Shown in pieces: positions 28,208-37,536 of a stretch of DNA of 64,000 bases (positions are counted from its first letter, which is position 1; every line of letters starts with the position of its first letter). Both the position numbers and the translations under genes were made by a program. The DNA lies in IMG/VR virus record IMGVR_UViG_3300030019_000003, positions 1 to 64,000 of that record; one strand, 5' to 3'. The notes under the pieces were generated by a model that was given only the letters and a program-made list of their open reading frames with translations, ran no database searches and was not told where the DNA came from.

Positions 28208-29611
28208 TTATTTTTTACTTTCTGCCTGCCTGTCAAGAGACTTATTAGCCAGTGCAAGAATTCTTAATACGGCCTTGTTTGTATAAATACAAGATAGTAT
28301 AATATCTACAACTAGTTCATTTTTAATACTAATCATTTTTTGAAGTTCTCTAAGCTTACGAGTAGCCTCAGTATCTGTTTTATCGACCTTATTAGCAGCT
28401 TCAAGTTCCTTAAGCACTTTATCAAAATCTGCATCAAGAGGTTCATATTCTTTAAAAATATGTTTCATGGCTTCGCTTGATTTAGAAATAGCGGCGCTCA
28501 TTTTCACAAGCGTACCTAAATCAAATTTGCGTATAAGTTTTATTGTTTCATCTGAACTTTCCATAGCGCCATCTCGTCTGCTATATGTGATATTAGAACC
28601 ATGGTTTTCTACAAGATCAATAACACGGTGTTTACTATAGGTAACCCTCCACGCAATATTTGTTTCTTCGTTCCTGTCAATGGTTATCACGCCAAAATAC
28701 TGACCTTTACACCAGATTAAATATTGTCCTGACCCACTACTATGGGGGTCTATGTCAGGAAGTTTAGGGTCTATATCGCCTTTAACATCTTTAGCGTTAA
28801 TTTTTTTCTGCCCAAATTTATCAAAATTACCACCAATTCTTATGGAGTTAAACCCTTGGAAATCTTTAGTCTCTATACCAATAGCTCTAAGATTATCTAC
28901 TATGTCAATATATTCCTCATAGATATCAAATACGCATTTTGAATTGACAGGATTAAAAAATTCGATCGCGGATACACTTTTATAAATATTTTTTAAGGTA
29001 TTTGTATTTACAAAAATCCCGCCGTTTTTTAAATTAGCGACATAGTCATCACCGACTTCAGAAACAAAATTTTTACCAGTATTTTTTAAATTAAATTCCT
29101 GAAACTTAGCTTTTATTTCATCTTCAATACTTTGAGCTTTTTTAACATCTATTTGAGTAACTATTAATATTTTAGCCCACCACATTTTAATCTTAATGAT
29201 GATAGCTTTGATAAATTCTTTAATGTTGCGAATTATAGTCAACACGGTGTCCCTAAAATCTTCATTAGAAAAACTATCAAAAGATTCAACACTCATGATA
29301 CTTTTCTTAAGCTGACAGCCACTAATGTTACAAGCAGTGATATAACTGATCTTAAGATCATTCATCATCTCTGTTGTTACTTCAGTTCCAGCTGACTCAA
29401 CGATCTCAACATTCGTTATAAGATCATCTACAGCCTCACCAGAGTCATTAACATGCTGTGTCGCAGCTTCAATATCTCGCTCATCTTCAACAGCACTGTC
29501 TTCTTGTTCATCACCCTCTATAACATCTGTTGTTGTTAATGGTTCTAGAATCTCTTCGTCGGCATCTTCTTTGCTAAGGCGATTTAAGACACTAATAAGT
29601 TTACTTTTCAC
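28208..29611 (-). CDS. Head-internal protein paralog (gp93-like family)
   Basis: Start moved to GTG 29611 behind AAGGAG; acidic propeptide, MSVE|S and FSNE|D sites, then IIRNIKEFIKAIIIKIKMWW helix. Confidence 0.65.
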   Translation of the reverse strand: MKSKLISVLNRLSKEDADEEILEPLTTTDVIEGDEQEDSAVEDERDIEAATQHVNDSGEAVDDLITNVEIVESAGTEVTTEMMNDLKISYITACNISGCQLKKSIMSVESFDSFSNEDFRDTVLTIIRNIKEFIKAIIIKIKMWWAKILIVTQIDVKKAQSIEDEIKAKFQEFNLKNTGKNFVSEVGDDYVANLKNGGIFVNTNTLKNIYKSVSAIEFFNPVNSKCVFDIYEEYIDIVDNLRAIGIETKDFQGFNSIRIGGNFDKFGQKKINAKDVKGDIDPKLPDIDPHSSGSGQYLIWCKGQYFGVITIDRNEETNIAWRVTYSKHRVIDLVENHGSNITYSRRDGAMESSDETIKLIRKFDLGTLVKMSAAISKSSEAMKHIFKEYEPLDADFDKVLKELEAANKVDKTDTEATRKLRELQKMISIKNELVVDIILSCIYTNKAVLRILALANKSLDRQAESKK

Positions 29612-29680
29612 ATGTACTCCTTTTTTATTATTACCTATATTCAAAAAAATGCCTTAGAAGATTCTAAAACATCATAATGA

Positions 29681-29714: not shown

Positions 29715-30212
29715 ATGAATAATCCACTCGTATTTATATCAACTTTTCTAGGTGAAACTAGAGAACACCAAGCCTCTATAGGTTGGGATACTAAAAGGTT
29801 GATAGAAACTATTTGTGATGAAGTAAGATGTGAGTTAAAACCAAAAGGATTAACTAATCTTACTAAAACCTTTGTTATAGACGAAGAGGTCTATGAACTG
29901 CATTTATTTATCGGTTTAACCGGTGTTAGATTTACACGTATGAATCAATTTGGTGTTGATATTAATAAGGCTATTATATCAACGTATATTACTGTTAACC
30001 CAGAGGACAAAAGACCTGGTATAACATGTCCAAACTTTAATACCGTGGGCATTACTACGTTAGAAGATCTTTTTGATGCACGAAGTGATTGTTGGCATAA
30101 GCTATTAACAAGTTTTAATATCTATATGAGCAACAAGAGACATACGACACCAGAAGGTGGTAAAATAAAATTAAAAAGAAGAGAATCTCTTCTAGTTAAG
30201 ATTCAAAAATAA
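29715..30212 (+). CDS. Hypothetical protein
   Basis: 165-aa ORF with CAAGGAG RBS. Confidence 0.6.
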   Translation: MNNPLVFISTFLGETREHQASIGWDTKRLIETICDEVRCELKPKGLTNLTKTFVIDEEVYELHLFIGLTGVRFTRMNQFGVDINKAIISTYITVNPEDKRPGITCPNFNTVGITTLEDLFDARSDCWHKLLTSFNIYMSNKRHTTPEGGKIKLKRRESLLVKIQK

Positions 30213-30238
30213 AGTGTAAACTGTGCGAGGTATACGAA

Positions 30239-30604
30239 ATGAAATCTAAATATAATAAACGTAGTGTTTGGCTTGTGCCAAAAGACTTCTTAACAGGTAG
30301 GTATCTGCAGCTTAGAATAGTTACTAATACTTTCATCAGGGCACCTAAAATAAGCATTTATAATAAAGAAGGCGAGTTACCCTTCCTTATAACACGCTTT
30401 GCCAGTTATGGTGGTTTAAAGTGCTATAGATCAGCTACTATCTTTATTAATAAATCTTTATTAGATAAAGATGTTATGCTAAGGTTATATGGTGAGAGAG
30501 TTAATACCAAAAGTTATCTGGATCCTGTATCTATCTTTAACGATGATACTTTTGAAGCAGATAAAGCTTATGGTAGGAAACGTAACCTAGTTGCTAAATA
30601 TTAG
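30239..30604 (+). CDS. Hypothetical basic protein
   Basis: 121-aa ORF with GAGG RBS. Confidence 0.55.
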   Translation: MKSKYNKRSVWLVPKDFLTGRYLQLRIVTNTFIRAPKISIYNKEGELPFLITRFASYGGLKCYRSATIFINKSLLDKDVMLRLYGERVNTKSYLDPVSIFNDDTFEADKAYGRKRNLVAKY

Positions 30605-31196
30605 CGAGTTATTAAAAAATAAACATAAGGAAAATCCTATGATCGAAGTTAAAACAATATTCTTGGGTAAAGAAACAACAAAAGAGTTTGAAGACGCGAA
30701 TGCCGTTCTATCCTACTTGTCAAGAAGTAGTAATGAGAAATATGATTCATTCAGTAACATCTTACAGCCTGTTAGTTTAACTAAAAGTTGTATCGGCGGT
30801 ATGATCAATACCAGTGTTGATTTTACACTCTCTTCTGAGTTAAAACAAGTTGGTGAAACCTATGAGGTTGAGATTAGAATTTCTAAAATTGAAGGTCTGA
30901 TCAGAACACCTTGGGGTAATAAACAGTTTACCTATACTGATATTAAACAAAATGTTAAAAGCCCCGTAGAAGCTTTTGAGCTTATCTGCGACTCTATGTA
31001 TCAGAATGTAACAGATAAATCATTAGAGTTGTTCTACTATAGCCGTGGAACAGGTAATGCTGTTAAAGGTATCATGTCTGGTAAGGTACAAGTAGTTAAA
31101 AGCTATTGGTACAGCGTATTATTTAATGCAGGTACAAGAGTACTTAATAAGGTATCCAGCCTTATTAATCAGTTTAGAGAAGTAGCGGGTATATAG
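30591..31196 (+). CDS. Hypothetical protein (true start may be the ATG after AAGGA at about 30638)
   Basis: 201-aa ORF ending at a palindrome. Confidence 0.55.
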   Translation: MLNISELLKNKHKENPMIEVKTIFLGKETTKEFEDANAVLSYLSRSSNEKYDSFSNILQPVSLTKSCIGGMINTSVDFTLSSELKQVGETYEVEIRISKIEGLIRTPWGNKQFTYTDIKQNVKSPVEAFELICDSMYQNVTDKSLELFYYSRGTGNAVKGIMSGKVQVVKSYWYSVLFNAGTRVLNKVSSLINQFREVAGI

Positions 31197-31226
31197 TAAC
31201 AGAGTAGCCTAGGCTACTCTGTTACT
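31195..31226. terminator. Perfect 32-bp palindrome between convergent units
   Basis: AGTAACAGAGTAGCCTAGGCTACTCTGTTACT. Confidence 0.75.
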
Positions 31227-31228
31227 TA

Positions 31229-31402
31229 TTATTTTTTATTTTTTAAAGCATCTTCAATAAGCTTTATTAGATCAGGATATTTTTTAACTCTAGAATCTAA
31301 AAGCTCCTCAAGAGACTGCCAATCTTTATTTTTTATAGCCGTCTCGATAATTTCTTTGTATCCGTCATATTTAACATCATCATCAATTAGTTTTCTAATT
31401 AC
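31229..31402 (-). other. Startless 57-codon -1-frame extension of the 401-aa head protein, reachable through an A10 run / A_AAA_AAG
   Basis: GAA AAA AAA AAG TAA; the -1 frame reads VIRKLIDDDVKYDGYKEIIETAIKNKDWQSLEELLDSRVKKYPDLIKLIEDALKNKK then TAA TAA, right before the terminator. Confidence 0.5.
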
Positions 31403-32604
31403 TTTTTTTTTTCGACAACACTAATTTGTGCTTCTATTAACCAAGCGATATTTTTCATGGTATAAAAATAATTAAGCAAACACCCATTTCCAGCTTTACC
31501 TGTTATGACAATAGACTTGTTTATAACTGATAATGTGCTTTTAATATCGTGACTATCAAATTTTTTACTTAAGCTTTCAGTCATTTTTAAAAGGGCTTTT
31601 CCATCGGCAACATCGTTATCAACGCCACCCTTGTACTTATTAAAATTAGACAACATTTTTTCTAATTCTAAAAGTAGATTGCTAACCTGCTGTTTACTGT
31701 ACCTAGGTAATGGTAATGACTCTTGGCCACTATTTGTAGCTGCGGTATGAAATCCTATTTTACCCGTATCCTCTATAATATATAAACCTGTTAGTTTATT
31801 ATCATGAAACTCTATAGGAATAATAACCACGGATGTATTAGAATTGGGAACTATGCCATCATCCACTAGTGATTGTTTCAATTTACCGGTGATAGTATTT
31901 TTAACATTGTTAAGATGATTATTAAAATAATCAAAAGCTCTTTTAACGTAAAAATTCAATAAGTCACTCTCAGGGACATCTTCTTCTTTAATATGGTACT
32001 CTTTGTCAAACGTATCCTGATTTGTTATACCCCAGGCTATTGAATTATTAAGTTCTCCTATATTTCTAGGAGTTGTCGCTATCTTAATAGCATCTAAAAT
32101 TCTTTCATAACTTAATTGGTTATTTTGAACAAGCCCTGAGAGGCAAATCATTGCAAATTTTCTAGTGAAAGCGGGAGATTCAATACCGCCCTTAGTTTCT
32201 TTAAAATCTGGTAATGTACCTAATGTTGATTTTAACTCAGCTACGTGTTTTTCAAGAAGTTTTGTACCAGTCACAATGCTAACAATGAGACGTTTAATAG
32301 CGGCAATGATACTTTGAAATAACTTATACATATTAGCAATGATCGTATTAATAACATCTTTAAACGATTCTTTACTAAGTTCTTCAAATGTTACTTGTTT
32401 ACCATGAGGTACTGTAATATCTGTAAAAGCTAAAATAGTTCTTAAAGCCTCAGTAGTAATGGTACCATCATCATTAACAACATCCATTACGATATCTGCA
32501 TCGCCCATAACATCAGTAGCCTCGCCAATGAACTCGCTTTCATCATTTATGCCACTCTCGGCATCTTGTAATTCTGATTCTTCCTCAAATGATAAACCTA
32601 ACAT
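31399..32604 (-). CDS. Head-internal protein paralog (gp93-like family)
   Basis: LSFE|E and LSKE|SF sites, IIANMYKLFQSIIAAIKRL helix; similar to the two adjacent genes. Confidence 0.65.
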   Translation of the reverse strand: MLGLSFEEESELQDAESGINDESEFIGEATDVMGDADIVMDVVNDDGTITTEALRTILAFTDITVPHGKQVTFEELSKESFKDVINTIIANMYKLFQSIIAAIKRLIVSIVTGTKLLEKHVAELKSTLGTLPDFKETKGGIESPAFTRKFAMICLSGLVQNNQLSYERILDAIKIATTPRNIGELNNSIAWGITNQDTFDKEYHIKEEDVPESDLLNFYVKRAFDYFNNHLNNVKNTITGKLKQSLVDDGIVPNSNTSVVIIPIEFHDNKLTGLYIIEDTGKIGFHTAATNSGQESLPLPRYSKQQVSNLLLELEKMLSNFNKYKGGVDNDVADGKALLKMTESLSKKFDSHDIKSTLSVINKSIVITGKAGNGCLLNYFYTMKNIAWLIEAQISVVEKKK

Positions 32605-33800
32605 TATCTCTCCTCATCTTGGTCTACAATACTTAGACATAGTTGTCCATAATGTAAAATATTTTTAATCTGCATATAGTAATTTGCCATATCAGAATTA
32701 CCTATTCTTGGTGCCGTTACACTGTACTCTTGTATAAAGTGCATATTGTCGTTGAACATAGTTTGACTTGTGTCTTCATCGTCAATAACACGATCAGCTT
32801 TATTAAAATTAAAGACAATCTTTTTACAGGTTTCAATATCATTATCAACAAGATCTTTAAATCCATCTAGTCTCATACAGAGGCGTTTAGCCATCTTTAG
32901 AACATTTAGTAATGTTGTCCTAGAAGGTAATTCTTTAAAGGCTGTTAATGTATTACTATAGGTTACTGAACCTTTAGTATATTGAAACTTACCTGTTCTA
33001 GCAATGATACCGGCACAACGATTACCATAGTATTCAACTACAATCACATGATCTTTTTCAACGGTACTTTGTATCTGCTCTGGTATATGATCATAAAGGT
33101 ATTTATTTAATACGGCGTTAACACCTAGTCCAGGTTTCATACCTTTAGCAACAGCTTCTGTTGTAAAAACTATCTTATCAAAGTTAATACGTTGTAACCC
33201 GGATTGTATTACGTTGGTCATAGGAGCTGTTAACTTAGGAGATCCTATACTTTGTTCTGCTTTTAATAAGAATTTACAAAGATTCTCATTCGTATCGATA
33301 TTACCACCTGCTCTTATCATCGTTGAGAAATAACGATATACTGAAGTAATGTCCATCTCAGAGAGATATTTATAAAAATGTTCGGTGTTCATCTTTTCAA
33401 GACGTTCTATCATACCTTCTATATTGGATTCTATAATTCCTATAGAATGAACAATACGTGTGAAGAGCTCTTTAAACATGTTCATAACAACGTTAATAGC
33501 ATCACTAATGATCTTACCCGTTCGTTCCAAAATACCATGTCTGTCCTCTTCTAAAGACAGAGTATTATCTTCATGAGTGTATTCCATCTCAGATAGGATT
33601 GCTTTATAAGATTCTAAACCAACAACATGTTCTAAACTGTTAGGTTCGCTCTTATCAATACGATCGACACTCTCTTCAAGCTGACCATAGTTTTCTAACT
33701 CTTTATCAATTTCATCACAAAGAGTATCGATTTTTAATTTCTGTTCTAAGAACTCTTCATGGGCTATAAAAAAGTTATAGTTCTTATCCATTGTAACCAA
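32604..33800 (-). CDS. Head-internal protein paralog (gp93-like family)
   Basis: GLE|SY and LSLE|E sites; shares EYYGxxCxGII and PxxGNxxxxNY motifs with neighbours. Confidence 0.65.
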   Translation of the reverse strand: MVTMDKNYNFFIAHEEFLEQKLKIDTLCDEIDKELENYGQLEESVDRIDKSEPNSLEHVVGLESYKAILSEMEYTHEDNTLSLEEDRHGILERTGKIISDAINVVMNMFKELFTRIVHSIGIIESNIEGMIERLEKMNTEHFYKYLSEMDITSVYRYFSTMIRAGGNIDTNENLCKFLLKAEQSIGSPKLTAPMTNVIQSGLQRINFDKIVFTTEAVAKGMKPGLGVNAVLNKYLYDHIPEQIQSTVEKDHVIVVEYYGNRCAGIIARTGKFQYTKGSVTYSNTLTAFKELPSRTTLLNVLKMAKRLCMRLDGFKDLVDNDIETCKKIVFNFNKADRVIDDEDTSQTMFNDNMHFIQEYSVTAPRIGNSDMANYYMQIKNILHYGQLCLSIVDQDEER

Positions 33801-35052
33801 CCTTTACTGTTTCTGGTTTACTTACGTTATCAAAACACGTACTTGCTAGCCAATACATATTCTTTAAGAAGTTAAAGTAGTTAATGATATTAGCATTTCC
33901 AAGTTTAGGAACAGTTCGAGTATATTGATTAACAATTCTCATACTGTAGTCCAGTTTCTTAACTTCACTATGTTCCATAGCATTGACATTAGTAACCATG
34001 ATATGCGCTAACATAACATCACATAGTATGATACTATTATCTATAGCTTTTTTAAAGTTACTATAGTTTCTATCCATGTTATTAAGATCTCGCATGAAGC
34101 CTCTAAGATGAGTAACTGTAATATCGCTGGTCATCTCTTCTTTACCTGTTTTAGTACAGAATACACCATACAACTCAGTAGCACCAAGATTCTTATATGC
34201 CTCAGTATACTGTATAGCACCATCTCTAACAATGATGCCTTTACAGGTAGTACCATAGTACTCTATACATGCGCTGTGTTTTGTTTCAGCATCATTATAG
34301 CCTTCTAGCATATTGTTAAAGTGCTCTTTCAGTTTTCGACTATTAACACCGCTATTGATCTCATCGATCTCAGTATCGATGATCTCTTGACCATCTTCAT
34401 CCAGTTTATCATAATCCGCGCTATGGGTTACCGTAACATTAATAATATCAACGATACGCTTACCCGCATTAATAGTAATCTTAGGAGAAGATATATCTTC
34501 AAGAACATCATTAATATTACGCATAACGTCTTTAACCGTTAATGTTCTAGTATTGGTCTGTATGATTGTCCCAAAGCGTTTAAACACTTTTAAAGTATCA
34601 CTACTATTAAAATCACTAATAGGATTACTAGCAGGTAACGTCATTATCTTACTACTCAGTCTTTTTATCATTTGACTGTAAATAACAGTACTGTTTGTAA
34701 TATTAATAAATATCTTCTTAATAGCAGCAACAATCTTATTAAAGGTTGCAAGTATGATACCCATTAATGTTTTAAAAGCTTCTTTAAACTTAGTACCTTC
34801 ATCAACACTCTCAACAGAGAGTTCTTCTAACCCTATACTCTCAACACTAAGATTATACGATTCTATAATATACTTTGCAGTAGTAGGTTTATAACTTTCA
34901 CTTGTTACAGCAGTAATACAATCGTTTATGTTATCCTTAGCATCTATCATGTCTGTTAACTCAGTATCAAGATAGTTATACTCTTCTAGGTCATCATGTA
35001 GTTCTTCCAGAGATGCTGTTAGCTCTCTGGTCTCAGCATCGGTTATCGTCAT
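33784..35052 (-). CDS. Head-internal protein paralog (gp93-like family)
   Basis: Start moved to ATG 35052 behind AAGGGAG; LSVE|S repeats; shared motifs with 31399-33800. Confidence 0.65.
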   Translation of the reverse strand: MTITDAETRELTASLEELHDDLEEYNYLDTELTDMIDAKDNINDCITAVTSESYKPTTAKYIIESYNLSVESIGLEELSVESVDEGTKFKEAFKTLMGIILATFNKIVAAIKKIFINITNSTVIYSQMIKRLSSKIMTLPASNPISDFNSSDTLKVFKRFGTIIQTNTRTLTVKDVMRNINDVLEDISSPKITINAGKRIVDIINVTVTHSADYDKLDEDGQEIIDTEIDEINSGVNSRKLKEHFNNMLEGYNDAETKHSACIEYYGTTCKGIIVRDGAIQYTEAYKNLGATELYGVFCTKTGKEEMTSDITVTHLRGFMRDLNNMDRNYSNFKKAIDNSIILCDVMLAHIMVTNVNAMEHSEVKKLDYSMRIVNQYTRTVPKLGNANIINYFNFLKNMYWLASTCFDNVSKPETVKVGYNG

Positions 35053-35478
35053 GGTATCTCCCTTATGGCTCATTCTATCATTGAAGTGTCTCGCCACTAA
35101 CATCCTATTCGCACCTATGGTCTATCTACAACTATACCTTAGAGTATAGTTGTTATTCGTTAATAACTATATTAATATGTATATATTATATATAATAACA
35201 ACTCACACCTAGCACAACCCCCTATCCCCCCATACGTATTATGTTGTTATCATATATAATATTATATCTTTACATCTCTCCCCGGATACTTTCATCACTT
35301 CGTTCTTCAAGTATCCGACCCTCTCTTAATAAAAGTTAAGATACTCATCTAATATAATTTTGTAATTATTATTAAAAACATATTATTCATCTATAAGGGA
35401 GAATAAAATACTGTTGTCTACATATTTAAATAATAATCTAAAAAGAGGTAATCAAATGATTAATCATAAGGGAGTGAT

Positions 35479-37536
35479 ATGAGCAGTTCATCTGTAACTA
35501 ATAACGTTGTATCTAACAGTGATGTAGTTAACGCAGTTCCTGTACGAGAGTTGATGGGGTTTAAACCTGAAGAGTTATTAAAGGGATTACGTAAGAATCT
35601 TGATGTACTCTTTGAGGACAATGTCGTTATAAAGATGCGGTGGGCTGAGGTTGTACTTAACCGGTATGTCTTCATACTTTTAGATTATGCTCCGAATATT
35701 CCTATTCTTAGCAAGTATTGTATTAAGAACTATTATAACAACGGAATTTATACTTCCAAGACTATTAATAAAGTCTTGGAAAAGATATTTGAAAGTATCG
35801 TAAAGAATATCTGTGTTCCGATGGGTAATAGAGATCTTATCCCAGTCTTAGCCAAGACAATTTATCAACTTCATAATCGTATCTATAATGAAGTAGTTTA
35901 TGAGTTATTGGAATACGCTGGATCCGTTGATATCGTTGACTTCTTGGAGATACAAAAAGATCCAAGACTTCTAAAAGCAATACAAAAAGTAGATGAAAAT
36001 AAAGATGCTCGTTCTATTAATGAAGCTTATGATGTACTTGAGACAGTTATTAAAGAAACACCTGATAACATTATCTCTAAAGGGTATATTGGAACAACGT
36101 TTAATCCTAATCAGGTTAAACAACTACTAGGACCACGTGGACATATTACAGAAATCAATAGTGATATTTTCAAATTCCCTGTAGCTTCTTCATTTGTTCT
36201 TGGTATGAACTCTATGACAGATATTGCTATGGAATCAAGAGCAGCCGCTAAAGCATTACACCTATCTTCTACAGCAGTACAACAATCTGAGTATATTGCT
36301 AGAGAGATGCAAATGGTCTCTATGTATATTCAAGGTCTATGGTATGGTGATTGTGGTACTAAGACATATACAGATTGGTACGTTCGTGGTGATGAACCCG
36401 GTGTTAAATCGGATATACCTTCTTTAACAGGTAAATGGTTCTTAAACGATGCAGGTGTTGAGGAATGTATCACATCAGATCATAAGTATTTAGAAGGTAA
36501 AACTATCAAACTACGTATGATTCATAACTGTAGACTTCCTGATAAACGTTGTGTATGTTCTAGATGTTATGGTGAGCTATCATGGTCTATACCTAAGCAT
36601 GCTAATATTGGTCACTATAGTTCAACGTACATAACTCAAAAGTTAACACAGGCTATCTTATCTACGAAGCATCATACTTCTTCTGCTGTATCTTCTACGA
36701 TTGTTCTAGATGACTTGAGTAAACAATATATGGTAGTTAAACAAGGTGCTAGTTATGCATTTAGACCTAATCTATTAGGTAAAGTAAAAACGAAGTACTA
36801 TATGATTGTTACTCAAGCTGAAGCTCCAGGTATTAAAGATTTTGATTATCGTACCAATGTTAATAAACTTAGACCTAATCGTGTAAGTCGTATTCGTAAG
36901 ATCATCTTGATGGAAGAAAGTGAACAAGCTACTAAGTTCATCGATCTTCCGATTAAAGATGGCAATCGTATAGGAAGTTTCACATATAAGTTCTTAGAAC
37001 ATATTCGTGATGTTGGTTATAGTCTTGATAAGAAAAATAGGTTTGTTATTAGTCTTGAAGGTTGGGGGAATAAAACGTTTATTGATTTACCTAACCTAGA
37101 GTTTAATCACCTTGAAATGATCAAGATGATCCGTACAGAGTTAAAGTATATGAAAACAGAAAAAGCAGGATTTAAAGCAGAAACAATTGAATCATTTGTT
37201 GTTAAGCTTAATGATATGCTAAACAGTAAACTAGATGTTCCATTGATTCATACTGAAATTGTTGTTGCAGCGCATACTGTAGCTAATCCAGAAAATAGAA
37301 ATTACGATATGGCTAGAAATAACGCTGAATCAGGGTTAGCTAACTATCGTAACATATTAAGTGGTAGGTCGCTAGGTGCTGGCTATGCTTGGGAACGTGT
37401 TATGGGTATGATGCTTAAAACACCTTTAGGGTATGGTAACCAAAGAACAACAAGTCATCCTATGGATGTATTCATTAGACCTAATGAAGCTATATCTGAA
37501 TATGAACGACGTGGTAAATACTTAGCAAGAAGTTAA
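35479..37536 (+). CDS. Non-virion multisubunit RNA polymerase beta-prime subunit, C-terminal part (phiKZ gp74-like)
   Basis: NQVKQLLGPRG, bridge-helix region SRAAAKAL…SEYIAREMQ, GDCGT, Zn site CRLP…VCSRCYGE, trigger-loop region TQKLTQAILSTKH. Confidence 0.85.
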   Translation: MSSSSVTNNVVSNSDVVNAVPVRELMGFKPEELLKGLRKNLDVLFEDNVVIKMRWAEVVLNRYVFILLDYAPNIPILSKYCIKNYYNNGIYTSKTINKVLEKIFESIVKNICVPMGNRDLIPVLAKTIYQLHNRIYNEVVYELLEYAGSVDIVDFLEIQKDPRLLKAIQKVDENKDARSINEAYDVLETVIKETPDNIISKGYIGTTFNPNQVKQLLGPRGHITEINSDIFKFPVASSFVLGMNSMTDIAMESRAAAKALHLSSTAVQQSEYIAREMQMVSMYIQGLWYGDCGTKTYTDWYVRGDEPGVKSDIPSLTGKWFLNDAGVEECITSDHKYLEGKTIKLRMIHNCRLPDKRCVCSRCYGELSWSIPKHANIGHYSSTYITQKLTQAILSTKHHTSSAVSSTIVLDDLSKQYMVVKQGASYAFRPNLLGKVKTKYYMIVTQAEAPGIKDFDYRTNVNKLRPNRVSRIRKIILMEESEQATKFIDLPIKDGNRIGSFTYKFLEHIRDVGYSLDKKNRFVISLEGWGNKTFIDLPNLEFNHLEMIKMIRTELKYMKTEKAGFKAETIESFVVKLNDMLNSKLDVPLIHTEIVVAAHTVANPENRNYDMARNNAESGLANYRNILSGRSLGAGYAWERVMGMMLKTPLGYGNQRTTSHPMDVFIRPNEAISEYERRGKYLARS

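What the first reader, a model, noticed from the sequence alone, without database searches (positions are those of the whole stretch)
31229..31412. Candidate programmed -1 frameshift adding a 57-aa helical tail to a head protein
Seen in sequence: the 401-aa head paralog ends GAA AAA AAA AAG TAA, an A10 run containing the classic bacterial slippery heptamer A_AAA_AAG directly before the stop. The -1 frame stays open for 57 protein-like codons, has no start codon of its own (an in-frame TAG lies just upstream), and ends in TAA TAA exactly at the terminator palindrome. A small hairpin AATTAG-AAAA-CTAATT follows the slip site, though it is weak and close. The sister paralogs end at the equivalent position, so the tail is an add-on. 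Inference: two isoforms of an internal head protein arise by ribosomal frameshifting or RNAP slippage.
Basis: partly seen in the sequence, partly recalled or inferred. Interest (0 to 1): 0.6.

Follow-up and report, generated by a model that had tools for sequence, protein, structure and literature searches.

The report
Slippery A10 extends phage head protein
In an uncultured peat jumbo phage, one internal head protein gene ends in a ten-A slippery run, and a one-base slip there would add a 57-residue helical domain, probably giving a short and a long form of the protein; this is a known trick, not previously reported for this phage group in the paper library I searched.

Summary
A minus-strand gene (31399-32604, 401 aa, phiKZ-type internal head protein) ends GAA AAA AAA AAG TAA. 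The -1 frame then runs 57 codons with no ATG, GTG or TTG to TAA TAA, directly before a strong palindromic hairpin.

- **A10 is real:** five other assemblies from peat metagenomes match exactly, so an assembly slip is unlikely.
- **The tail looks coding:**
  - Its codon score is typical of real genes and beats 99.6% of stop-free non-coding frames.
  - Counting it as coding shrinks the genome's largest convergent gap (202 nt) to the usual size (29 nt).
  - It folds as a confident small helical domain, unlike an antisense control.
- **The run is exceptional:** coding regions have 2 A/T runs of 8 or more, against about 36 expected. This is the only Lys-Lys-Lys written AAA AAA AAG.

Most likely (about 0.65) a fraction of product is a 458-aa isoform, made by RNA polymerase slippage, -1 ribosomal frameshifting, or both.

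Nothing shows expression or conservation. The protein has one distant relative, which lacks the tail. The hairpin after the slip site is too weak and too close to act as a stimulator. This is a new member of a known kind.

The parts
31399..32604 (-). Internal head protein paralog, 401 aa (P0001), zero-frame product
   Evidence: ORF list and translation. Pfam PF12699 phiKZ_IP 28.7 bits (cut-off 27) and PHROG 2497 'internal head protein'. Its ATG overlaps the stop of the upstream paralog (TAATG).
31403..31412 (-). A10 run. The in-frame slippery heptamer A_AAA_AAG is 31408-31402, directly followed by stop TAA 31401-31399.
   Evidence: Sequence. Identical in five other assemblies. It is one of only two A/T runs of 8 or more inside called coding regions, and the other lies 2 codons after a doubtful start. 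About 36 are expected.
31232..31402 (-). -1 frame extension, 57 codons, with no start codon of its own; predicted small helical domain
   Evidence: Translation. Codon score 28.3, against 22.3 +/- 6.9 for real genes and 4.6 +/- 11.9 for stop-free non-coding frames. AlphaFold2 pLDDT 81.6, four main helices. No gene caller ever called it.
31226..31231 (-). Tandem stops TAA TAA ending the extension
   Evidence: Sequence. 22 of 236 called genes have a tandem in-frame stop.
31384..31401 (-). Weak 7-bp hairpin starting one base after the heptamer; probably not a stimulator
   Evidence: -3.1 kcal/mol on its own; the wider 96-nt region has z -1.7.
31195..31226 (.). Perfect 14-bp palindromic hairpin between the convergent genes. 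It has a T-tract only on the + strand.
   Evidence: Terminator scan. Fold -23.2 kcal/mol, z -7.6. It breaks the Logan assemblies into a 32-nt piece in all four runs.
30591..31196 (+). Convergent neighbour gene (201-aa ORF, no family match) that defines the gap
32604..33800 (-). Paralog, 398 aa; ends at the position equivalent to the 401-aa stop
   Evidence: Alignment A1; own-genome search.
33784..35103 (-). Paralog, 439 aa; ends 8 residues beyond the equivalent position
   Evidence: Alignment A1; own-genome search; weak PF12699 hit.
28208..29644 (-). Paralog, 478 aa; the best phiKZ_IP match in the cluster
   Evidence: PF12699 31.3 bits over model positions 9-356; PHROG 2497; alignment A1.

Best explanation
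The gene makes two isoforms of a phiKZ-type internal head (inner body) protein.

- **Standard decoding** gives the 401-aa form, ending ...VVEKKK.
- **A one-base slip at the A10 run** puts the ribosome in the -1 frame at G31402. This adds 57 residues that form a small helical domain, giving 458 aa and ending at TAA TAA just before the hairpin.

Two routes give exactly the same protein.
- (a) RNA polymerase stutters on the ten A's and makes some mRNAs with eleven.
- (b) The ribosome slips -1 on A_AAA_AAG while the adjacent UAA stop is slowly decoded.

I rate production of the long form at about 0.65-0.7. Given that it is made, I lean slightly (about 0.55 to 0.45) to polymerase slippage as the main route.

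Shown: the sequence layout, the true A10 in DNA, the coding character of the tail, and the uniqueness of the run. Inferred: that slippage happens, its rate, and that the long form enters the capsid. The role of the tail is unknown. My guess is an extra interaction module carried on a minority of inner-body subunits.
For: 1. **A10 is genomic.** Contigs of three separate peat runs (X1 31197-31942, X3 31197-31636, X4 31197-31455) and JGI contigs L005 and L007 span the run with 0 mismatches and 0 gaps.
2. **The tail is coding-like.**
   - Its codon log-likelihood is 28.3. Real in-frame 57-codon windows give 22.3 +/- 6.9, and off-frame windows give -60 +/- 25.
   - Only 2 of 468 stop-free non-coding-frame windows reach its score.
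3. **Genome layout.** The gap 31197-31398 (202 nt) is the largest of 23 convergent gaps (median 37 nt). With the tail coding it becomes 29 nt.
4. **No independent expression signal.** There is no ATG, GTG or TTG in the 63-codon stop-to-stop frame and no Shine-Dalgarno-like core upstream, whereas 176 of 236 genes have one. No gene caller ever called it.
5. **Slippery runs are purged from coding regions.**
   - A/T runs of 8 or more: 2 observed, 35.6 +/- 4.7 expected under synonymous shuffling.
   - Runs of 9 or more: 2 observed, 12.3 +/- 2.7 expected.
   - None of 22 Lys-Lys-Lys is written AAA AAA AAA (37% expected), and only this one is AAA AAA AAG.
   - In-frame A_AAA_AAG: 9 observed, 21.6 expected. 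A_AAA_AAA: 14 observed, 53.6 expected.
   - Depletion grows with run length, which fits a polymerase-level cost.
6. **Fold.** The tail alone gives pLDDT 81.6 and pTM 0.59, with four main helices. The antisense open frame of the same DNA gives 63.8 and 0.38.
7. **Established knowledge.**
   - A_AAA_AAG is the most shift-prone -1 heptamer in E. coli, and about half of bacteria have a single tRNA-Lys (PMC5009743).
   - Runs of 9 or more A/T cause transcriptional slippage. This is used in Thermus dnaX, in Shigella mxiE and in IS elements (PMC1088944).
8. **Own RNA polymerase.** The phage encodes an RNA polymerase beta subunit at 35479-37536 (PHROG 3015, E 1e-136).
Against: - No RNA or protein data exist. 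No RNA run holds the locus.
- No conservation can be shown. The exhaustive HMMER search found one real relative (P0003, E 3e-8), and it ends at the short-form position with a convergent gene 36 nt later.
- The tail has no homologue anywhere and no fold match.
- There are no canonical frameshift stimulators. No Shine-Dalgarno-like element lies upstream. The downstream hairpin is worth -3.1 kcal/mol at 1-nt spacing. The upstream region folds no better than shuffles (z 0.07).
- The host, and so its tRNA-Lys set, is unknown. The phage carries only tRNA-Met.
- All assemblies are identical, so there is no variation to test for purifying selection on the tail.
- Contigs cannot exclude a minority of A11 genomes.
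- High pLDDT for a short helical peptide is weak evidence.
Confidence: 0.66

Rival explanations
1. Recent frameshift mutation or DNA-level phase variation. The ancestor had a single 458-aa ORF with A11. This population lost one A in a hypermutable tract. The tail is now silent, or made only through incidental 'rescue' slippage, and has not yet had time to decay.
For: - Homopolymers of 10 are mutation-prone, and rescue of such breaks by slippage is documented (PMC1088944).
- All assemblies are clonal with 0 differences, so an intact tail frame says little about long-term selection.
- Contigs hide minority variants.
Against: - The three paralogs and the only outside relative end at the short-form position, so the tail is an add-on and not an ancestral part.
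- An A11 ancestor would itself break the genome's strict avoidance of AAA AAA AAA (0 of 22).
- The break leaves the ideal heptamer A_AAA_AAG plus a stop exactly in frame.
- The same A10 is seen in contigs spanning the site from four Logan runs or JGI metagenome contigs that are clearly separate; sample overlap between the two sources is unknown.
Confidence: 0.15
2. A separate 56-aa protein. Ribosomes that terminate at UAA reinitiate at the AUU codon that overlaps it (UAAUU, 31401-31397), in the way the UAAUG overlaps elsewhere in this cluster work.
For: - ATT at 31399-31397 is in the tail frame and overlaps the stop.
- The upstream paralog pair uses TAATG.
- Gaps of -1 and -4 nt (overlapping stop and start) are common among co-directional genes: 7 and 9 cases.
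Against: - AUU is a very poor initiator (general knowledge).
- There is no Shine-Dalgarno-like core upstream.
- This reading leaves the unique A10 run and the perfect heptamer at exactly this junction as coincidence, in a genome with 2 such runs against about 36 expected.
- No standalone homologue of the tail exists.
Confidence: 0.07
3. Non-coding 3' region. The 57-codon open frame is chance, and the 170 nt between the stop and the hairpin are untranslated.
For: - By composition, a stop-free run of 57 codons has a chance of about 0.013 per frame (my estimate from 34% GC).
- The antisense frame is also open.
- There are no homologues.
Against: - The codon score is in the top 0.4% of stop-free non-coding frames and above the mean for real genes.
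- The gap would be the largest convergent gap in the genome.
- The fold is confident, unlike the antisense control.
Confidence: 0.06
4. Sequencing or assembly error. The true sequence is A11 and a single 458-aa ORF.
For: Homopolymers are error-prone. Depth in the Logan contigs is low, about 5-6x.
Against: - The virus record, three Logan assemblies from different samples and two JGI contigs all read A10.
- No other gene in the 252-kb genome is broken at a homopolymer.
Confidence: 0.04

Closest known systems
Phage T7 (and T3) gene 10A/10B
   Same: A -1 shift near the 3' end of a head protein gene adds a C-terminal extension of similar size to a minority of subunits, giving two isoforms in the capsid (PMC5009743; the sizes are from my own knowledge).
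   Different: - T7 shifts on G_GUU_UUC in the major capsid protein, with a long-range 3' element.
- Here the site is A_AAA_AAG within an A10 run, in an internal head protein.
- Here polymerase slippage is an equally good route.
E. coli dnaX tau/gamma and IS3-family orfAB
   Same: The same heptamer, A_AAA_AAG, read by tRNA-Lys.
   Different: - Those sites have an upstream Shine-Dalgarno-like element and a strong downstream structure at proper spacing. Neither is present here.
- In dnaX the shift shortens the product. Here it lengthens it.
Transcriptional slippage recoding: Thermus thermophilus dnaX (A9), Shigella mxiE, IS elements
   Same: A run of 9 or more A/T in a coding region yields mRNAs with extra bases. 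In mxiE the inserted base fuses two overlapping ORFs into a longer product, as proposed here (PMC1088944).
   Different: - Those cases use host RNA polymerase.
- Late genes of phiKZ-like phages are transcribed by a phage-encoded multisubunit polymerase (my own knowledge). Its slippage has not been reported in the library searched.
Poly(A)-tract breaks rescued by slippage in the endosymbionts Buchnera and Blochmannia
   Same: In AT-rich genomes, a frame break at a run of about ten A's still yields full-length protein through polymerase infidelity (cited in PMC5009743).
   Different: Those are degenerating genes rescued by accident. Here the short form matches the normal length of the family, and the extra part is an add-on.
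Lambda G/GT tail assembly chaperone frameshift
   Same: A phage structural-module gene in which a -1 shift near the end yields a fixed ratio of short and extended products (my own knowledge).
   Different: The slip site (G_GGA_AAG), the protein and the role all differ. G/GT is conserved across many phages, whereas this case stands alone.

Membership tests
phiKZ-like internal head protein (Pfam PF12699 / PHROG 2497) | Profile match above the curated threshold | tested here: met
   P0001 scores 28.7 bits against a cut-off of 27, but over residues 77-138 only. The paralog 28208-29644 scores 31.3 bits over model positions 9-356. PHROG 2497 E 6e-4 and 7e-6.
phiKZ-like internal head protein (Pfam PF12699 / PHROG 2497) | Cluster of diverged paralogs in a phiKZ-like genome | tested here: met
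   Four paralogs at 18-25% identity. DNA polymerase is 34-37% identical to phiKZ-like phages. A phage RNA polymerase beta subunit is present.
phiKZ-like internal head protein (Pfam PF12699 / PHROG 2497) | Propeptide removed by the prohead protease after Glu (S/A/G-X-E in phiKZ, from my own knowledge) | tested here: inconclusive
   Glu52 is invariant in all four paralogs within T/G/S-x-E. Cleavage cannot be tested here.
phiKZ-like internal head protein (Pfam PF12699 / PHROG 2497) | Presence inside the capsid | not testable with these tools
   Uncultured phage from a peat metagenome.
Programmed -1 ribosomal frameshift (X_XXY_YYZ type) | Slippery heptamer in the correct zero-frame phase | tested here: met
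   A_AAA_AAG at 31408-31402.
Programmed -1 ribosomal frameshift (X_XXY_YYZ type) | Overlapping -1 ORF that is coding and has no start of its own | tested here: met
Programmed -1 ribosomal frameshift (X_XXY_YYZ type) | Stimulators: an upstream Shine-Dalgarno-like element and/or a stable structure 5-9 nt downstream | tested here: not met
   No Shine-Dalgarno-like element. The hairpin is worth -3.1 kcal/mol at 1-nt spacing. The region has z -1.7. The only possible enhancer is the adjacent UAA stop.
Programmed -1 ribosomal frameshift (X_XXY_YYZ type) | Conservation of the site and the overlap in relatives | tested here: inconclusive
   There is only one distant relative, and it lacks the tail. No closer relatives were found in phages, IMG/VR or metagenomes.
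Transcriptional slippage recoding | Run of 9 or more A or T in the coding region | tested here: met
   A10 at 31403-31412, confirmed in five other assemblies.
Transcriptional slippage recoding | One inserted base fuses the two frames | tested here: met
   A11 would read GAA AAA AAA AAA GTA ATT..., the same product as the -1 shift (sequence).
Transcriptional slippage recoding | Such runs are otherwise selected against in the genome's coding regions | tested here: met
   2 observed against 35.6 +/- 4.7 expected for runs of 8 or more.
Transcriptional slippage recoding | mRNA length heterogeneity at the run | not testable with these tools
   No RNA run holds the locus.

The most novel reading that the evidence does not exclude
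A nucleus-forming-type jumbo phage uses stuttering of its own multisubunit RNA polymerase at a single retained A10 tract to set a fixed ratio of two inner-body protein isoforms. The minority form carries an orphan helical module that is packaged with the DNA and delivered into the host. This would be the first recoding event reported in phiKZ-like head assembly, and the first evidence that these phage polymerases slip and that their genomes are shaped by it.
Probability: 0.3. Interest if true: 0.55.

Novelty: new member of a known kind. Interest (0 to 1): 0.42.

Why it matters
C-terminal extension of phage structural proteins by frameshifting is well known (T7 10B, lambda GT, Listeria phages). 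The principle here is therefore not new.

What would be new:
- A recoded inner-body protein in the phiKZ-like lineage, whose head interior is still poorly understood.
- A hint that the phage's own RNA polymerase is slippage-prone. This genome has about 18-fold fewer long A/T runs in coding regions than synonymous shuffling predicts.

In practice, gene callers miss the tail entirely. Proteomic and structural work on such phages would therefore fail to identify the extra domain unless this kind of junction is checked.

Tried and rejected
**Searches for relatives**
- Megablast and tblastn of the gene against 50,697 phage records found nothing.
- IMG/VR scans with the protein and with a paralog alignment found nothing.
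- The word-index protein search found only the protein itself.
- The exhaustive HMMER search found one distant relative.
- The metagenome scan found only identical copies.
- A conservation test, or a dN/dS test on the tail, was therefore impossible.

**Searches with the tail alone**
- Own genome, phages and the protein database gave no relative.
- Two Staphylococcus phage hits at E 0.08 are taken as chance.
- The Atlas feature search gave weak ankyrin-like leads with a recognition score below the useful level, and I did not rely on them.
- Foldseek against PDB and BFVD gave no match at E of 0.001 or better.

**Stimulators**
- The downstream hairpin is rejected as a stimulator.
- An upstream hairpin of the kind that drives IS-element slippage is not present (z 0.07).

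- The fused 458-aa product was neither folded nor searched.

- Read laying gave contigs only, so counts of minority A9 or A11 reads were not available.

- No other genetic code was used.

Full report
**What is there**

The window is the first 64 kb of a 252,159-bp virus record with direct terminal repeats and 34% GC. The same sequence is found in peat metagenomes.

The feature lies on the minus strand.
- ORF 31399-32604 (401 aa, P0001) ends GTC GAA AAA AAA AAG TAA.
- The A run is 31403-31412. The in-frame heptamer A_AAA_AAG is 31408-31402. The stop is 31401-31399.
- From G31402 the -1 frame reads 57 sense codons (VIRKLIDDDVKYDG...ALKNKK) and ends in TAA TAA at 31231-31226.
- This frame has no ATG, GTG or TTG. 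A TAG closes it six codons upstream of GTA, so it can be entered only across the A run.
- A perfect 14-bp palindromic hairpin (31195-31226; -23.2 kcal/mol, z -7.6) follows immediately. It separates the gene from a convergent plus-strand gene that ends at 31196.

**Identity of the gene**

- P0001 passes the Pfam gathering score for phiKZ_IP (PF12699; 28.7 bits against 27). The match covers only 62 residues. It also hits PHROG 2497, "internal head protein".
- It has three diverged paralogs nearby: 32604-33800, 33784-35103 and 28208-29644.
- The genome context is phiKZ-like.
  - The DNA polymerase is 34-37% identical to those of phiKZ-like phages of Burkholderia, Ralstonia and Pseudomonas.
  - A phage RNA polymerase beta subunit lies at 35479-37536.
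- All paralogs end within about 8 residues of the 401-aa stop. The tail is therefore an add-on to the family's normal length.

**Is A10 an error?**

Probably not.
- Logan contigs from three different peat runs span the run with no mismatch and no gap: X1 31197-31942, X3 31197-31636, X4 31197-31455. A fourth, X2, starts at 31392, only 11 bases before the run.
- Two JGI contigs (L005 from Ga0302286, L007 from Ga0302208) are 100% identical over 2.1-2.4 kb and read A10.
- No other gene in the genome is broken at a homopolymer.

Caveats:
- Some of these assemblies may come from the same samples.
- Depth is low, about 5-6x.
- Contigs cannot show minority variants.

**Is the tail coding?** Four independent lines say yes.

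1. **Codon use.**
   - A codon-frequency log-likelihood trained on the genome's long genes gives the tail 28.3.
   - True in-frame 57-codon windows give 22.3 +/- 6.9, and off-frame windows give -60 +/- 25.
   - Against the fairer control of 468 stop-free windows in non-coding frames (4.6 +/- 11.9), only 0.4% reach the tail's score.
2. **Layout.** The 202-nt gap between the 401-aa stop and the neighbour is the largest of 23 convergent gaps (median 37 nt). With the tail counted as coding it becomes 29 nt.
3. **Start-less extension.** Among 290 off-frame extensions beyond gene ends that do not run into a called gene, this is the only one of 30 codons or more with no start codon. The few longer ones all have starts and are probably small uncalled genes.
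4. **Fold.**
   - AlphaFold2 on the single sequence gives a compact domain with four main helices (pLDDT 81.6, pTM 0.59).
   - The antisense open frame of the same DNA gives 63.8 and 0.38.
   - This is weak evidence on its own, because short helical peptides often score well.

**Is the slippery run special?**

Yes. The genome avoids such runs in coding DNA. Compared with synonymous codon shuffling within each gene:

| Feature in coding regions | Observed | Expected |
|---|---|---|
| A/T runs of 8 or more | 2 | 35.6 +/- 4.7 |
| A/T runs of 9 or more | 2 | 12.3 +/- 2.7 |
| In-frame A_AAA_AAA | 14 | 53.6 +/- 7.1 |
| In-frame A_AAA_AAG | 9 | 21.6 +/- 3.9 |

- The only other long run in a called coding region lies 2 codons after a doubtful start at 95385.
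- Of 22 Lys-Lys-Lys tripeptides, none is written AAA AAA AAA (37% expected). Exactly one is AAA AAA AAG, and that is this site.
- The genome's one tolerated slippery run thus sits exactly where two coding frames abut. The direction is also right: a -1 ribosomal shift, or one extra A in the mRNA.

**Mechanism**

Both routes give the same 458-aa protein.

- *Polymerase slippage.*
  - Runs of 9 or more A/T are the length at which selection against slippage becomes evident in many bacteria.
  - Such runs are used for expression in Thermus dnaX, in Shigella mxiE (where an inserted base fuses two ORFs) and in IS elements (PMC1088944).
- *Ribosomal shift.*
  - A_AAA_AAG is the most shift-prone -1 heptamer in E. 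coli.
  - About half of bacteria have a single tRNA-Lys (PMC5009743).
  - A stop codon in the A site next to a slippery run is the classic "shifty stop" setting (reference).

Three points make me lean slightly to polymerase slippage.
- There are no canonical frameshift stimulators.
  - No Shine-Dalgarno-like element lies upstream.
  - The downstream hairpin is worth only -3.1 kcal/mol and starts one base after the heptamer.
  - The 96-nt region has z -1.7.
  - The upstream 68 nt fold no better than shuffles.
- The depletion of runs grows with run length.
- Eight other in-frame heptamers are tolerated.

The host is unknown. About 75% of genes have a Shine-Dalgarno-like core, and the phage carries only tRNA-Met.

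**What could not be shown**

- *Conservation.*
  - The exhaustive HMMER search of 1.84 billion representatives found only the protein itself, one real relative (P0003, 178 aa, E 3e-8) and one marginal hit (P0004, 1036 aa, E 5.5e-4), which I did not examine.
  - P0003 ends at the short-form position, with a convergent gene 36 nt later and no tail.
- *Homologues of the tail.* None were found, and there was no fold match.
- *Expression.* No RNA data exist.
- *Selection.* All assemblies are identical, so selection on the tail cannot be measured.
- *The fused product.* It was not folded or searched, because the tools take only letter-for-letter translations.

**Rivals**

- A recent A11-to-A10 mutation or phase variation (0.15) is not excluded by clonal data. 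It fits poorly with the family's normal length and with the genome's avoidance of AAA AAA AAA.
- Reinitiation at the AUU that overlaps the stop (UAAUU; 0.07) is possible. It leaves the unique run as coincidence.
- A chance open frame (0.06) and a sequencing error (0.04) are each contradicted by the tests above.

**Comparison and verdict**

- The closest analogues are T7 gene 10A/10B (a head protein extended by a -1 shift), dnaX and IS3 (the same heptamer), and Thermus dnaX and mxiE (polymerase slippage).
- No paper listed from the held library links phiKZ-like phages with frameshifting or slippage.
- I file this as a new member of a known kind. It is a well-supported candidate, of moderate interest, and awaits RNA or protein evidence.

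Noticed in passing
G000:C1 92749-92776, 133609-133635, 167607-167635, 231611-231640 (outside the window): A conserved motif TTCTGTTCACCGAAC recurs. In three of the four cases it follows a T9-T10 run directly, and it lies in intergenic DNA. It may be a phage promoter or another regulatory site. Most long T runs in the genome belong to this motif.
   Followed up: partly
window 31195-31226: The 32-nt perfect palindrome between the convergent genes appears as a separate 32-nt piece in the Logan assemblies of all four runs, with contigs breaking on both sides. It is a hairpin that splits de Bruijn graphs. It has a T-tract only on the + strand.
   Followed up: partly
window 32449-32451 (Glu52 of P0001) and the aligned positions in the paralogs: Glu52 is invariant in all four internal head protein paralogs, within a T/G/S-x-E motif after an acidic N-terminal region. 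It is a candidate prohead protease cleavage site like the S/A/G-X-E of phiKZ (the phiKZ motif is from my own knowledge).
   Followed up: no
window 29715-31196 (+): Three plus-strand genes with no family match (165, 121 and 201 aa) sit inside the minus-strand cluster of internal head protein paralogs and split it in two.
   Followed up: no
window 32509-32604: Metagenome gene callers start this protein at Met33 (P0002, 369 aa). The ORF, however, extends to an ATG that overlaps the stop of the upstream paralog (TAATG), which suggests translational coupling and a 401-aa product.
   Followed up: no
G000:C1 93003-93077 (outside the window): The 252-kb phage carries a single tRNA gene, tRNA-Met (CAT).
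   Followed up: no
G000:C1 95385-95897 (outside the window): An A9 run lies 2 codons after the called start of a 170-aa ORF. The start is probably miscalled, with the run in the leader. It is the only other long run that touches a coding region.
   Followed up: no
L004 4680-5216: The only outside relative (P0003) is a 178-aa protein that matches just the C-terminal third of the family. It lies on a 6.9-kb Logan contig, with 465 nt of apparently non-coding DNA upstream.
   Followed up: partly
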